From positions 29,016,001 through 29,080,000 of the forward strand of contig NW_026889751.1 of the NCBI RefSeq assembly GCF_033153115.1: a stretch of 64,000 nt of DNA, given 5' to 3'. Below the pieces are notes generated by a model. The model saw nothing but the letters and a program-made list of their open reading frames with translations, was not told where the DNA came from and ran no database searches. Positions 1,927-9,261 of this stretch are shown here, in pieces. This DNA comes from Saccostrea echinata (taxonomy: Eukaryota). How positions within the stretch are numbered: the first letter of the stretch is position 1; every line of letters starts with the position of its first letter. The position numbers and the translations under genes are program-made.

Positions 1927-4900
1927 CAATGGTACATGTTGGCATTGGTGTAACTCAAGTTAACAGTCTCCTTTCTGAGCTGAATATACCACCTGTTAGT
2001 CATGCCATGCTAGACAATAGACAGAAAGAGATTGGCAGAGCTGTCCAAGATGTTGCTGCAGAGTCTATGTCTAATGCTTTGCAGAAGGAACTGGGAATGA
2101 TGAATGAGTGTGTATACAATATAAATTCAGTTTAAAATCTCACTTTTTAGCTCAACTGAGCCAAAGGCTCAATTGAGCTTTTCTGATCAAAGGGTGTCCA
2201 GCAACCATGTGTAGTGGTCATCTGTTAACTTCTCACATTTTCGACTTCTCCACACAAACCAATTTCGACCGTACTTGCCACAAAGCATCTCTGGGTAAAG
2301 GGATTCAAGTTTGTGCAAATGAAAGGTCAGGATTCAAGTTTGTTCAAATGAAGAGTCATGTTTTCTTTAAAAGGGAGATAATTAATAATTAGAGAAAATT
2401 TAATGTTATGTTTTAAAAGTCTTCTTTAAGAACCACTTGGCCAGGAAAGAGGAAATTTATGTGAAAGCTAGCTTCATTACATAGTGTAAAAATCATGACC
2501 CCCCAGGACTAGGGTTTTTACAAAAGGTGATCAAATTTTATTCAAGAATATATAGGAAAAATGGTTTTTTTTTTTAAATTAGGTTGAGACTACAATAGCG
2601 GATTAGAGTTTTATAAAGGAGTACATAAGATAGAGTTGCAAGATCACACTAAATCCTATAAATTACTAACACATATCTAAGATGTGAAGAGTAGATTTTT
2701 AAAAAAAAATTATTAGCACTGGGGTTAGAGTTGAGCCAAAATCAGAGCAGTCAAATTTTACATAATGCATGTGTAAAGGAAAAAAAACCAGCAGGACCAT
2801 GTTGATCATATTTATATTGAAGCATCCCAATGTTGTGTTGATTAAACTTTGAATAAATCATATAACTCCTTTAGTCTACATTTTGGTCCACCGCATGGAG
2901 TCAAAATATTTATAAAAAATTTAATTTTGGTTGTAACGCATTATTTGATTGGATAAAAAATTTTAGTTTTTATGGTATAACCTGTGTTGCCTACGTCACA
3001 ATGACTTAATGTACGTCAAAAACGTATCAATCCGCTTGGTGTTACTTTTAAAATATGTGCAATTCGAAGGCATTTCTGAAGGAGAAATTGTCTTATTGAT
3101 TTAAAAAATTAAATTATAAGGAGTGAATTTAATAGCTACATATACTGGTATAACTTGGGTTGGAACAGTTTATGACTTTTTATATACTGCTTCGCAGTTA
3201 CTAGATATACTTATAAATGTTAGTTTTAGTCATCTACTGCATAATTAGTGCTGATAAATATGCAGATTGTTATGCATATTAGGGAGGTGTTCTAAAGGAG
3301 ACAGGTTCACAGGCTAATAACTGATGTCTGTTATTTAACTATCTTTCAGAGAGATGAATGAAAAGGGACTAGTTGTTGCTGTAGATGCTGGATGGCAAAA
3401 ACGGGGAAGTGGAAAGACATATGATAGTTTGTCAGGTAAAAATAGACAAATTTTAGGAAAATGAAACAAATATTAATGCATAGAGTGATTTATTTTGGCC
3501 TGCGTCCCCCATGAATTATGCATTAATTTTGCTCAGGACATGATTCCAATAAATATGTATGCAAACAGATGCAGTAAAGAATGGGTGGAGTTAACGCCCT
3601 TTGGATCTTTTTGCAATTCCTCTACCAAGCTGTAAATGAAGTGAATCCAAAATATATTGCAAGCAATAGAAAGAGTTACGTATACATGGTTATATTAGGT
3701 AGAACATTTGTACAAAAGCAAGGCCTTTTGCCATGAATCAAAATTGAAGCAACGATACATTAGTGTCGTCTTCCGGAATTTGGCATGTACCCGGAGTGGT
3801 TTTTAGGTCACGTAATCAAATTTATAGGAGGTGGGGCTATCGATCGGCATCATTGTTGACATCTCTCTCTCCCTCTCTAGAAATTCGAATATGTGTATGG
3901 CATATTGCAGCGATGTCAATATGACCCTGATTATCTATTGATTATCTATTGATATTCAAGAAATCTTCAGGCACCATGCCTTCGATATTTATTTAGTTTA
4001 CCTCAAAAAGAGTGTTTTAAATCCACACCTGTACCATGAATACATGGTTAAGATATCGGGGATTTATATGATAGAAAGAAAGAAACATTTTATGAAAAAG
4101 ATACATGTATCCCAAAGTTCAACTGTACATTGAAATTTTAAAATATTCTTCCAAAGAACAGCCATTAGTAGTCATGTATAGATACAAGCATGCTCAGGTA
4201 AAGCATATTCAATTTTGTTTGAACTATGGCCCCAAGGGGGTAAGATGGAGCCACAAAAAGGGATATAATTTTTACATGGGAATTTATAGGAAAAAACTCA
4301 TTAAGGAAGAGCCTTAATGAGTCAAATCAATATGCAAGCACTCTCATTAGCAATATTAGGTGAATTTTATTCAGAGGAATAAAGAAAGGAAAAACTTTTG
4401 TATAGATTATCTTCTAAAGTGTGATAACCCATTGGCATTGTTTTGAAATTGGGTGTTAAATTTTTCTTTTACTTCAAAATATGTACTTTTTTAGGTCATT
4501 GTTCCATGGTTGGCCCTCTCTCTGGCAAAGTATTGTCATATTCTGTGAGGTCAAAGAATTGCAGAGTATGCAGTGTAGCTGAAACAACCAACAAGAATCC
4601 AGCAGCCCATGAGTGCTCAAAGAACTGGGAGGGAAGTTCAAAGGCCATGGAGGCAGATATGGTTATTGAGATGGTAGAAGATTTACAGAAAAGTGAAGGA
4701 ATAACCATTGACGGAATCATAGGAGATGAGGATACCACCACAATAGCAAGATTAAAAACTAATGTCAATGCTAATATCAAGAAGTTGTCTGATAAAAATC
4801 ATCTGAAGAAACTGTTTACAAACTCTTTGTTTACCTTGAAGAAAGAACATTCATCTCTAACTTTGTCTGTTATAAAGTATATTCAAAAGTGCTTCAGTTA

Positions 4901-7900: not shown

Positions 7901-9261
7901 CCTGTCCACTGTCTGCCATGTGTAAACTAATAAACATTTTTAACTTCCTGAAAACTATATGGCTCCCCCCCCCCCCCCCCAATGTTTGGTATAAAGCATC
8001 TTCAGAGTAAAGAGGAATTTAAATGTTATGGCTCTTGCACCTCAGAGGCCTGTGGGTGGGACAAAAACCAATGAAACTAAATGCACATAATTTATACAGA
8101 GGTAATATATGTTTTTCAAAAATTATATATTTTCTGTTGCTAATATTGAATAAAAGCAAATGCATATTTTGAAATGGCATAAAAGAAGTTTTTAAACCTC
8201 TATGATTCTGGTATTGGTAGTTGAGCATGTTTTATATCATTCTTTCAAAACTTTACTTTTCCTAATCTGACAACACTGAATTAAAAGAAAATGCATACTC
8301 TGAAAGAGTTCAAGCATTTTCGACAGGAGTTAAGGCTTGGGGAAGAGGGGCACTAGTATTTCATTGTTTCAAAATTTTTGAAATAGTGCATATATCAATG
8401 GATTTGTTTGGATATTTTATGTTTTGAATTTCAAAAACTTGAATATACTTGTTTTTATTTTCAGCAAGGGATTCTCATATTGTGCAGTTATCTGCAGTTA
8501 GAAATGATGAGGTATTCAACAAGTACATCATTCCAAAAAAACCAATGACATCAAAAGCTACAGAAATAACTGGAATACAAGTAGTCAACAATAAAATGTA
8601 CCACAATCATGAGGAAGTTGAGACAGTCAGCATTAAAGATGCTCTGATCCAGTTTATGGACTTCATGAAGATGTCGGGTCCAGATGTTGTTCTAGTTGGG
8701 CATAACTCTAAAGTGTTTGACCTTCCTGTGCTCTTCAACATTTTGAGTAAACTAAACATTTTGGAGACATTTTCATCTGCAGTCACTGGCTTCATTGATA
8801 CAATTCCTCTTTTCAAAATGACACATCCAAACCTTTCGTCATACTCGCAGTTACACCTCTTTGCAGAAATTCTACAAGACAAATACAGTGCGCATGACTC
8901 ATTACAGGATGTCATAGCCTTGAAGAGATTGGTCGATCATACAGGACCCTCCCATGAAGTCAAAGTTGCTGCATCCTTCACCTTGAACTCTGCCGTTGCC
9001 GTGTTTCATCACAAGAACACAACAAAGCATCTAATGAGTACACTAAGGCCTTTATTGGACCAAAAGGTAATTTCGAATGGAATGGGAAATAAGATTGCCG
9101 GCAGTGGACTCTCCTTATCCCACTTACAACTTGCATATCAGAGAAATGGTAGGGAGGGAGTGCAGGATGTGCTGTCAGAGATAGCTGATAATAGTGTGCG
9201 TGTGACAAAATCTAAAAAAATCATTGATTCTGTTGCAGATTATTTCAGGTCTGAGCAGTAA
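1927..9261 (+). CDS. Spliced DDE transposase (Kolobok / 'Mutator-like' type) fused to a C-terminal DEDDh 3'-5' exonuclease with PML/Plex9-like tail; 5'-partial, about 727 aa visible
   Basis: Exons 1927-2107, 3350-3435, 4495-5288, 6476-6615, 7261-7448, 8465-9261; all introns GT-AG, phases compatible, no stops. Transposase motifs: AMVHVGIG..LNIP, VAVDAGWQKRGSGKTYDSLSGH, KNCRVC..HECSKNWEGSSKAME, IIGDEDTTT, SDKNH, HIFGDHEHC..WC, TQSNESFN. Basic linker RKRQK..KRRRRELKAKR. Exonuclease motifs: YFDLETTG (ExoI), VGHNSKVFD (ExoII), AHDSLQD (ExoIII). Confidence 0.88.
2144..2900 (+). mobile_element. Degenerate non-autonomous Helentron (HINE-like) element in a transposase intron
   Basis: 5' TTTTTAGCTCAACTGAGCCAAAGGCTCAATTGAGCTTTTCTGATC hairpin shared with copies at 5298 and 14194; decayed 166-bp units. 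A 3'-end fragment of the same family lies at about 1625-1879. Confidence 0.65.
5298..6293 (+). mobile_element. Non-autonomous Helentron (HINE-like) element with about 3.7 tandem 164-166-bp satellite-like units
   Basis: TTTTTAGCTCAAGTGAGCTTTTCTGATCAC start, GTCC/CATC microsatellite, AAGAACCACT anchors at 5546, 5711, 5877, 6041; resembles the oyster 166-bp satellite carried by HINEs. Confidence 0.8.

What the first reader, a model, noticed from the sequence alone, without database searches (positions are those of the whole stretch)
1927..9261. Spliced DDE transposase fused in-frame to an intact DEDDh (TREX/PML-Plex9-like) 3'-5' exonuclease
Seen: six exons, two of which (3350-3435, 6476-6615) are absent from the ORF track, splice into one stop-free frame. 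It runs transposase core (D of VAVDAGW, D of IIGDED, DKNH, E of SNESFN, two Cys/His clusters), basic NLS-like linker, then exonuclease with all DEDDh residues (DLE, HN..FD, HDSLQD). The ExoI motif YFDLETTGL|ARDSHIVQLSA is assembled across the last intron, so the two enzymes form one polypeptide. Known: the core matches Kolobok/'Mutator-like' transposases; Kolobok subgroups with other accessory nucleases exist (lambda exonuclease, His-Me finger); the tail LRPLL..KVIS..MGNKIAGSGLSLSHLQLAY.R.G..G resembles the C-terminal region of PML/Plex9 exonucleases that restrict LINE-1. Inference: a two-nuclease transposon lineage whose exonuclease may process ends, clear excised DNA or suppress competing retroelements. 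I cannot tell whether this architecture is already catalogued.
Basis: partly seen in the sequence, partly recalled or inferred. Interest (0 to 1): 0.88.

Follow-up and report, generated by a model that had tools for sequence, protein, structure and literature searches.

The report
Oyster KolobokD transposon, transposase-exonuclease fusion
This is one copy of a young, multi-copy oyster DNA transposon whose single gene makes a cut-and-paste transposase joined to a working-looking 3'-5' exonuclease; the gene model is real, but this type of element (KolobokD) was already described in 2022.

Summary
The six exons, their GT-AG borders and the ExoI motif split by the last intron are all there. The gene is longer than reported: three more 5' exons lie upstream of the window, giving nine exons and 884 aa. 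A RefSeq protein from Saccostrea echinata (884 aa) matches all nine exon translations in order, with 4 mismatches.

The gene sits in a 14.3-kb element with TTAA target duplications and 17-bp inverted ends. At least 16 copies are 99-100% identical, and more than 100 diverged relatives occur in the same genome.

Transposase followed by exonuclease is conserved across diverged families here. The same order is seen in bivalves, abalone, Lingula, wasps, krill and a newt.

The architecture is published as the KolobokD lineage (Kojima and Bao 2022, PMC9587614), so the novelty claim fails.

What may be new is how close the exonuclease is to fish Plex9.1 (Z 27.6, rmsd 1.5 Å). It also carries the PML_C tail. 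A transposon origin of Plex9 and the PML C-terminus is possible but unresolved; my tree could not place the fish sequences.

RNA reads could not be obtained. First readers noted the same kind of element on three other pieces of this genome.

The parts
1..11481 (+). In-window part of a 14.3-kb KolobokD element. The element starts 2,846 nt upstream of window base 1, at G000:C2:29013154. That upstream part holds the 5' TTAA, the 5' inverted end and coding exons 1-3 (L020:1447-1612, 3122-3327, 3601-3697).
   Evidence: Three other copies align at 99.3-99.8% identity from window about -2846 to 11481, and homology stops there. The upstream exons were read.
1927..2107 (+).
   Evidence: PF20700 positions 80-134, E 4e-12. 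Matches residues 158-216 of P0176 with 1 mismatch.
3350..3435 (+). Coding exon 5, carrying the first catalytic Asp (D229)
   Evidence: PF20700 positions 151-171. Exact match to P0176 218-245. This Asp is present in all 27 aligned sequences that cover the column.
4495..5288 (+). Coding exon 6, the transposase core: CCHC zinc finger, second Asp (D323/D325), DxxH signature (345-348), second Cys/His cluster and catalytic Glu (E468)
   Evidence: PF20700 positions 174-357, E 2.7e-51. Residue conservation. 16 intact copies in the genome.
6476..6615 (+). Coding exon 7, a basic helical linker
   Evidence: Exact match to P0176 511-556. The GLSPG and basic motifs are conserved in relatives 44-48% identical. 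Predicted helices 521-572.
7261..7448 (+). Coding exon 8, linker plus the first half of the ExoI motif (D613, E615)
   Evidence: Exact match to P0176 558-619. The ExREGxxY, EIPxP and FDLETTGL motifs are conserved.
8465..9261 (+). Coding exon 9 with the stop codon: the rest of the DEDDh exonuclease (D705, H763, D768) and the PML_C / SAM-like tail
   Evidence: RNase_T E 2.2e-9 and PML_C E 1.9e-26. PDB Plex9-type chains at E 5e-35 to 1e-23. 16 near-identical copies.
9262..11460 (+). 3' untranslated and subterminal region of the element. It holds a 156-bp repeat at 9463-9753 and repeat fragments.
   Evidence: Shared by the other copies up to 11481. Tandem repeat. No ORF with a family match was seen.
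11461..11477 (-). 3' terminal inverted repeat, 17 bp, matching the 5' end at 16 of 17 bases (5'-GG...CC-3' termini)
11478..11481 (.). TTAA target-site duplication, 3' copy
   Evidence: TTAA flanks both ends in all four copies examined, and the flanks beyond it are unrelated.
5531..6149 (+). 166-bp tandem repeat (3.7 units) inside intron 6, carried by all copies compared

Best explanation
This is an apparently autonomous copy of a recently active KolobokD-type cut-and-paste DNA transposon in an oyster genome (Saccostrea echinata or a very close relative). The element is about 14.3 kb long, is flanked by TTAA duplications and ends in 17-bp inverted repeats. It carries one nine-exon gene whose 884-aa product has four parts. 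The first is a disordered basic N-terminus. The second is a Kolobok DDE transposase (D229, D323/325, E468, a DxxH signature and two Cys/His clusters). The third is a conserved basic helical linker. The fourth is a DEDDh 3'-5' exonuclease (D613, E615, D705, H763, D768) with a SAM-like PML_C tail. The architecture, copy number, ends and conservation of both active sites are shown here. The following is inferred. The transposase excises the element and inserts it at TTAA. The tethered exonuclease acts on the same DNA, most likely trimming 3' ends of transposition intermediates or leftover strands. This would resemble the way DEDDh domains fused to Cas2 trim prespacer 3' overhangs before integration. 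I put the identity and architecture at about 0.9 and this particular role of the exonuclease at about 0.4.
For: Ends and mobility:
- Four copies share 99.3-99.8% identity over 14.3 kb. Homology ends at TTAA on both sides and the flanks are unrelated. The termini are GG...CC with a 16/17 inverted repeat.
- 16 loci keep both large exons intact at the same spacing.

Gene model:
- All eight introns are GT-AG and the coding sequence is 2,655 nt.
- The nine exon translations are collinear with RefSeq protein P0176 (884 aa, a cluster of 49 members), with 4 mismatches.

Fusion:
- 27 of the 150 best exonuclease relatives carry the transposase core N-terminal to the exonuclease.
- More than 50 database proteins combine PF20700 with an exonuclease domain (PF00929 or PF22123) and/or PML_C (PF25244); most carry PML_C. 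They come from bivalves, Haliotis and Lingula and from wasps, krill and a newt.
- ORFs of 840-885 aa lie uninterrupted on contigs of 2.7-3.5 kb.
- Linker motifs are conserved.
- Of the first 50 diverged exonuclease matches in this genome, 46 have a transposase-core match 0.5-5 kb upstream on the same strand (paired by eye).

Active sites and fold:
- Catalytic columns are conserved.
- The AlphaFold model has pLDDT 82.6.
- The exonuclease matches Plex9.1 at Z 27.6, rmsd 1.5 Å, 35% identity. It matches Exuperantia EXO+SAM at Z 24.9 across residues 597-884. The transposase part matches the IS256-family ISCth4 transposase at Z 11.4. A Cas2-DEDDh complex is among the hits at Z 15.4.

Published family:
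- PMC9587614.
Against: No transcript evidence from this species could be obtained. No activity of either domain has been measured for any KolobokD element. A free 3'-5' exonuclease could in principle destroy the 3'-OH ends that strand transfer needs, so end trimming would have to be controlled. Some database proteins hold the exonuclease alone. These may be partial models or separately expressed forms.
Confidence: 0.85

Rival explanations
1. The architecture is the same, but the exonuclease serves immune evasion rather than the transposition chemistry. Like TREX1, it would degrade excised, unintegrated or cytosolic transposon DNA so that the host's DNA sensors are not triggered.
For: The closest solved relatives are Plex9.1 and TREX1/2. 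These degrade ssDNA and dsDNA and restrict retroelement DNA (PMC10123124). From general knowledge, bivalves have expanded cGAS-STING-type DNA sensing.
Against: Covalent fusion to the transposase in every lineage examined points to action at the transposition complex. A freely diffusing clearance enzyme would not need to be tethered. No localisation or sensing data exist.
Confidence: 0.25
2. The exonuclease suppresses competing retroelements by degrading their cDNA intermediates, as Plex9 and gar PML do for LINE-1.
For: It belongs to the same family as Plex9.1, which restricts L1.
Against: There is no evidence of benefit to a DNA transposon. The fusion to the transposase is not explained.
Confidence: 0.08
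3. Transposase and exonuclease are made as separate proteins, through an internal promoter or alternative transcripts, and the fusion is an artefact of gene prediction.
For: Many database entries hold the exonuclease alone at 250-400 aa. RefSeq lists several isoforms in Mytilus. No RNA reads from this species were available.
Against: The linker exons 7 and 8 are conserved as protein in relatives 44-48% identical. Uninterrupted ORFs of 840-885 aa span both domains on contigs of about 3 kb. ExoI is split between exon 8 and exon 9, so exon 9 alone lacks two catalytic residues.
Confidence: 0.05
4. It is a domesticated host gene family rather than a mobile element.
For: The ORFs are intact and both active sites are conserved.
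Against: There are at least 16 copies at 99-100% identity on many contigs. Each examined copy is bounded by TTAA and inverted ends with unrelated flanks. One internally deleted derivative also exists.
Confidence: 0.03

Closest known systems
KolobokD lineage of the Kolobok superfamily (Kojima and Bao, Mob DNA 2022, PMC9587614)
   Same: TTAA duplications, RR...YY termini, and a DDE transposase with a DxxH signature. It also shares the CCHC finger after the first Asp and a second Cys/His cluster before the Glu. It encodes a DEDDh exonuclease similar to Exuperantia, TREX and ERI1, and was found in molluscs, arthropods and cnidarians.
   Different: The paper gives only a short description. It does not state that the exonuclease is fused in frame, that ExoI is split by an intron, or that there is a PML_C / SAM-like tail close to Plex9. 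This 14.3-kb Saccostrea family could not be compared with Repbase entries.
Zebrafish Plex9.1 and related fish 'exodeoxyribonuclease III' proteins (PDB 9MRC/9MRD, 9L8B, 9L85; PMC10123124)
   Same: The same DEDDh family. Single-sequence E values are 5e-35 to 1e-23 and profile E values 1e-57 to 1e-64. Structural match is Z 27.6, rmsd 1.5 Å, 35% identity, with all catalytic residues present.
   Different: Plex9 proteins are stand-alone host proteins without a transposase. The fish relatives seen here lack the PML_C tail. The oyster domain is part of a multi-copy transposon.
PML C-terminal exonuclease-like module (CDE / PXL) and Drosophila Exuperantia EXO-SAM
   Same: A two-part layout of exonuclease fold plus SAM-like tail. 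PML_C scores E 1.9e-26. Exuperantia aligns over residues 597-884 at Z 24.9.
   Different: Human PML and Exuperantia have lost the DEDD residues and bind nucleic acid only (PMC13659232). The oyster domain keeps all five. PML has an RBCC N-terminus, whereas this protein has a transposase.
KolobokE and KolobokP
   Same: Kolobok transposases that have acquired a second nuclease.
   Different: Those carry a lambda-exonuclease-like PD-(D/E)xK nuclease or a His-Me finger nuclease, not a DEDDh exonuclease.
Cas2-DEDDh fusions of CRISPR adaptation (PDB 8FYC)
   Same: A DEDDh exonuclease tethered to a DNA-integrating enzyme. The structural match is Z 15.4. From general knowledge, that exonuclease trims 3' overhangs before integration.
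   Different: It is a prokaryotic system with an unrelated integrase. This is an analogy only.

Membership tests
Kolobok superfamily | [quoted passage not shown] | tested here: met
   TTAA lies at both ends of four copies with unrelated flanks.
Kolobok superfamily | Termini 5'-RR ... YY-3' with terminal inverted repeats | tested here: met
   The termini are GG...CC and the 17-bp inverted repeat matches at 16 of 17 bases.
Kolobok superfamily | DDD/E transposase with a C/DxxH signature between the second Asp and the Glu | tested here: met
   D229, D323/325 and E468, with D345-x-x-H348; each is conserved in all, or all but one, of the aligned sequences that cover its column. PF20700 scores E 1.8e-93 on P0176.
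Kolobok superfamily | Cys/His zinc finger between the DxxH signature and the catalytic Glu | tested here: met
   The HxFGxHxxCxxWC pattern is present in exon 6 and in the family consensus.
Kolobok superfamily | Sequence similarity to reference Kolobok families in Repbase | not testable with these tools
   Repbase and Dfam are not available here. Only the Pfam match and the published description were used.
KolobokD lineage | Encodes a DEDDh (DnaQ-type) exonuclease | tested here: met
   RNase_T match with D613, E615, D705, H763 and D768. The fold is confirmed.
KolobokD lineage | Second CCHC zinc finger just after the first catalytic Asp | tested here: met
   A CRxC...HxC pattern occurs in exon 6 and in the consensus.
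KolobokD lineage | Placement inside the KolobokD clade on the DDE-core tree | not tested
   Reference sequences (Data S5 of PMC9587614) could not be brought into the tools without typing them.
Plex9 / PML-type DEDDh exonucleases | Close sequence and structure similarity of the exonuclease domain with intact DEDDh residues | tested here: met
Plex9 / PML-type DEDDh exonucleases | PML_C (SAM-like) tail | tested here: met
   PF25244 at E 1.9e-26, covering profile positions 3-74 of 75.
Plex9 / PML-type DEDDh exonucleases | Stand-alone or RBCC-linked host gene of jawed vertebrates | tested here: not met
   The domain is fused to a transposase, is multi-copy in a mollusc and has no RING or B-box domain. 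It is related to these proteins but is not a Plex9 or PML orthologue.
TREX1/TREX2 | Sequence membership in the TREX family | tested here: not met
   The similarity is only distant: profile E 1e-10 for TREX2 and 6e-9 for TREX1, against 1e-64 for Plex9-type chains.

The most novel reading that the evidence does not exclude
The exonuclease-plus-SAM-like module of KolobokD transposons is the evolutionary source of the vertebrate Plex9 exonucleases and of the PML C-terminal exonuclease-like domain. Under this reading, a hallmark part of PML was captured from a DNA transposon. Support: fish Plex9-type proteins rank among the very closest relatives of the oyster transposon domain in a library of 1.8 billion proteins. 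A newt protein combines transposase fragments, the exonuclease and PML_C. The PML papers read here say PML and Plex9 appear abruptly in jawed vertebrates and never mention transposons. Not shown: my unrooted tree of the domain left the fish clade unplaced, and no PML sequences could be included.
Probability: 0.35. Interest if true: 0.7.

Novelty: new member of a known kind. Interest (0 to 1): 0.3.

Why it matters
As an element it is ordinary: a well-preserved, recently active member of a lineage published in 2022, and its fusion gene model is already in RefSeq. Its value is as a clean reference copy, with both ends, all nine exons and both active sites intact. That makes it suitable for asking what a tethered 3'-5' exonuclease does in cut-and-paste transposition, which has not been tested for any KolobokD element. 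The wider point is its closeness to Plex9.1 and its PML_C tail. If a rooted phylogeny placed Plex9 and the PML C-terminus inside transposon exonucleases, it would explain their sudden appearance in jawed vertebrates as a domestication event.

Tried and rejected

Genome fetches:
- I paired the coordinates by eye instead.

Joined model:
- Exons were searched one by one by reference.
- The database protein P0176 served as the full-length stand-in for alignment, Pfam and folding.

Empty site:
- BLAST of 400-nt flanks against the window found nothing besides the flank itself.

Literature:
- Supplements of PMC9587614 held no KolobokD table.
- Searches for PML or Plex9 together with Kolobok or transposon origin found nothing relevant.

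Tree:
- The tree used 155 exonuclease cores.
- The fish sequences form one clade with support 100.
- 77 of 152 forks are unsupported and there is no outgroup, so nesting could not be judged.
- The newt fusion does not group with the fish.

Transposase fold:
- The whole-model fold search gave only one transposase-part match, ISCth4 at Z 11.4.
- The transposase domain was not folded alone.
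Full report
**Observation**

The window is AT-rich eukaryotic DNA, with G+C of about 0.27-0.38. I read the region directly and checked the exon borders by script.

- Each begins after a pyrimidine tract and AG and ends before GT.
- The reading phases fit, with split codons GAA, GGT, AGA and GCA at the junctions.
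- The ExoI motif is assembled across the last intron: its first half ends exon 8 and the rest opens exon 9.
- Searched exon by exon against Pfam, the first three exons hit PF20700 (Mutator-like transposase) in order, at profile positions 80-134, 151-171 and 174-357.
- The last exon hits RNase_T (E 2.2e-9), Exu_RNase_H_like and PML_C (E 1.9e-26). The two small linker exons hit nothing.

**The gene is longer than reported**

PF20700 positions 1-80 were missing, so I fetched the DNA upstream of the window (L020). Three more coding exons lie there.

| Exon | Position in L020 | What it holds |
|---|---|---|
| 1 | 1447-1612 | ATG start and a basic N-terminus |
| 2 | 3122-3327 | Start of the transposase domain |
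| 3 | 3601-3697 | Continuation of the transposase domain |

The nine exons sum to 2,655 nt, giving 884 codons plus a stop.

A database protein found later has exactly this length: P0176, RefSeq 'uncharacterized protein LOC133199106 [Saccostrea echinata]', in a cluster of 49 members. All nine exon translations map onto it in order. Five match exactly and the other four have 4 mismatches in total. The genome is therefore S. echinata or something very close, and the fusion model already exists in RefSeq.

P0176 served as the full-length stand-in.

**It is a transposon**

- The exon 9 protein finds 145 places in the 923-Mb assembly. Sixteen are 99-100% identical, and fifteen of those span the whole exon uninterrupted (one stops at residue 251). 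More than 100 others are 30-49% identical, most without stops.
- The exon 6 protein likewise finds 16 near-identical copies at the same spacing from exon 9.
- Three other copies align to this one at 99.3-99.8% identity from about window -2846 to 11481, roughly 14.3 kb. Similarity stops there.
- Both ends abut TTAA in all four copies, and the flanks are unrelated.
- The termini are 5'-GG...CC-3' with a 17-bp inverted repeat matching at 16 of 17 bases.
- One copy (contig C7) lacks window 2713-4071, including exon 5. Several copies differ by about 316 bp at 9376/9377.

**Is the fusion real?**

RNA reads could not be obtained. The comparative evidence is nevertheless strong.

- Of the 150 best relatives of the exonuclease among 1.84 billion cluster representatives, 27 carry the transposase core N-terminal to the exonuclease, with a linker of about 110 residues.
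- Word-indexed searches list more than 50 proteins that combine PF20700 with an exonuclease domain (PF00929 or PF22123) and/or PML_C (PF25244); most carry PML_C. They come from Saccostrea, Crassostrea/Magallana, Mytilus, Pecten, Argopecten, Mizuhopecten and Ruditapes, and from Haliotis and Lingula. They also come from the wasps Prorops and Venturia, from krill, and from the newt Lissotriton, where the transposase is fragmentary.
- Several ORFs of 840-885 aa lie uninterrupted on contigs of only 2.7-3.5 kb. In those cases the single ORF needs no splicing inference.
- The linker is conserved as protein in relatives 44-48% identical. The conserved motifs are GLSPG, a basic stretch, ExREGxxY and EIPxP.
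- Within this genome, 46 of the first 50 diverged exonuclease matches have a transposase-core match 0.5-5 kb upstream on the same strand (paired by eye).
- Exon 9 alone lacks the first two catalytic residues, so a separately expressed exon 9 product would be inactive.

**Active sites and fold**

In a 53-sequence alignment (A1), the catalytic positions are conserved or nearly so.

| Domain | Conserved positions |
|---|---|
| Transposase | D229, D323/D325, E468 and the D345-x-x-H348 signature |
| Exonuclease | D613, E615, D705, H763, D768 |

An AlphaFold model of P0176 with this alignment has mean pLDDT 82.6. The N-terminal 80 residues are disordered and the exonuclease scores above 90. Structure searches and sequence searches against PDB gave the following.

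| Target | Structure match | Sequence match |
|---|---|---|
| Plex9.1 (9MRC) and Plex9-type chains | Z 27.6, rmsd 1.5 Å, 185 aligned, 35% identity | Single-sequence E 5e-35 to 1e-23; profile E 1e-57 to 1e-64 |
| Exuperantia EXO+SAM (5L80) | Z 24.9, spanning residues 597-884 | Profile E about 1e-15 |
| TREX2 | Foldseek E 5.1e-7, TM 0.67 relative to target (6A45) | Profile E about 1e-10 |
| TREX1 | Z about 20.5 | Profile E about 6e-9 |
| IS256-family ISCth4 transposase | Z 11.4, over residues 150-543 | No match |

**What is known**

Kojima and Bao (Mob DNA 2022, PMC9587614) define Kolobok by four features: TTAA duplications, RR...YY termini, the C/DxxH signature and a zinc finger before the catalytic Glu. 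They name lineages by their accessory protein. KolobokD encodes a DEDDh exonuclease, carries the extra CCHC finger, and occurs in molluscs, arthropods and cnidarians. The authors note its similarity to Exuperantia, TREX and ERI1, and they propose that it degrades DNA intermediates from the 3' end.

Every feature I could test is met here. No other paper in the library mentions KolobokD.

**What may be new**

The two PML/Plex9 papers I read (PMC10123124 and PMC13659232) describe PML and Plex9 exonucleases as appearing in jawed vertebrates. They never mention DNA transposons. Searches linking PML or Plex9 with Kolobok found nothing relevant.

Three observations point toward a link.

- A teleost 'exodeoxyribonuclease III' from Cottoperca (P0005) ranks fifth among all relatives of the oyster exon.
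- A newt protein combines PF20700 fragments, RNase_T and PML_C.
- The transposon domain shares the EXO-plus-tail layout of PML.

I tried a tree of 155 exonuclease cores. The fish sequences form one supported clade, but the backbone is unresolved, there is no outgroup, and the newt sequence does not join the fish. A transposon origin of Plex9 and the PML C-terminus therefore stays a hypothesis, at about 0.35.

**Mechanism**

The following is shown by computation: a mobile element with intact ends and a single fusion gene, both active sites conserved over deep divergence, and an exonuclease fold nearly superimposable on an enzyme that degrades ssDNA and dsDNA.

The following is inferred: the transposase cuts and pastes at TTAA, and the tethered exonuclease works on the same DNA. 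Constant covalent linkage across all lineages argues for action at the transposition complex. The nearest functional analogy is the DEDDh domain fused to Cas2, which trims 3' overhangs before integration; it appears among the fold hits at Z 15.4.

The rivals are TREX1-like clearance of stray transposon DNA to avoid host sensing, and suppression of competing retroelements. None of these has been tested for any KolobokD element.

**Earlier notes of the scan**

- A first-reader note on this window placed a transposon right end at 11440-11610 (s1-816261). The end is confirmed at 11481. Its 'paralogous empty site' was not found by a simple flank search.
- Three further first-reader notes describe the same kind of fusion on other pieces of this genome. 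That fits the copy numbers.

**Verdict**

The element is a new family-level member of the published KolobokD lineage. Interest is modest. The unresolved Plex9/PML link is the part worth following.

Noticed in passing
window 5531-6149 (intron 6), with related stretches near window 10308-10549: A 166-bp tandem repeat of 3.7 units at 91% match lies inside the intron and is carried by every copy compared. A stretch about 76% similar lies in the 3' region of the element. It is probably a nested short repeat family.
   Followed up: partly
L017 (G000:C7:5808298-5818297) against window 2713-4071: The copy on contig C7 lacks about 1.36 kb, including exon 5 with the first catalytic Asp. It is an internally deleted, presumably non-autonomous derivative.
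   Followed up: partly
window 9376/9377; L006, L010, L011, L012: Four copies carry about 316 extra bases in the 3' untranslated region relative to this copy. This is an insertion or deletion polymorphism between copies.
   Followed up: no
whole genome G000: Beyond this family, the genome holds more than 100 diverged exonuclease ORFs at 30-49% identity, mostly intact. Nearly all have a transposase core just upstream. KolobokD has diversified into many families in this oyster.
   Followed up: partly
proteins P0011 and P0036 (Anabrus simplex) and P0005 (Cottoperca gobio): Some relatives hold tandem exonuclease domains with no transposase. The cricket proteins have four and three domains. The fish protein has two, which are 96% identical to each other.
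   Followed up: partly
protein P0135 (Lissotriton helveticus, 917 aa): A vertebrate protein combines fragments of PF20700, RNase_T and PML_C. KolobokD-like fusions are therefore not confined to invertebrates.
   Followed up: partly
proteins P0237 ('peroxin-5', Mytilus galloprovincialis) and P0258 ('GGA', Mytilus edulis): These host-gene names are attached to models that contain the transposase and exonuclease or PML_C domains. They are probably chimeric gene predictions caused by transposon insertions.
   Followed up: no
proteins P0002, P0205 and P0219 (JGI metagenomes): These are eukaryotic transposon exonucleases, in one case with the transposase. In metagenome records they are labelled DNA polymerase III alpha or epsilon subunit, which is a naming error.
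   Followed up: no
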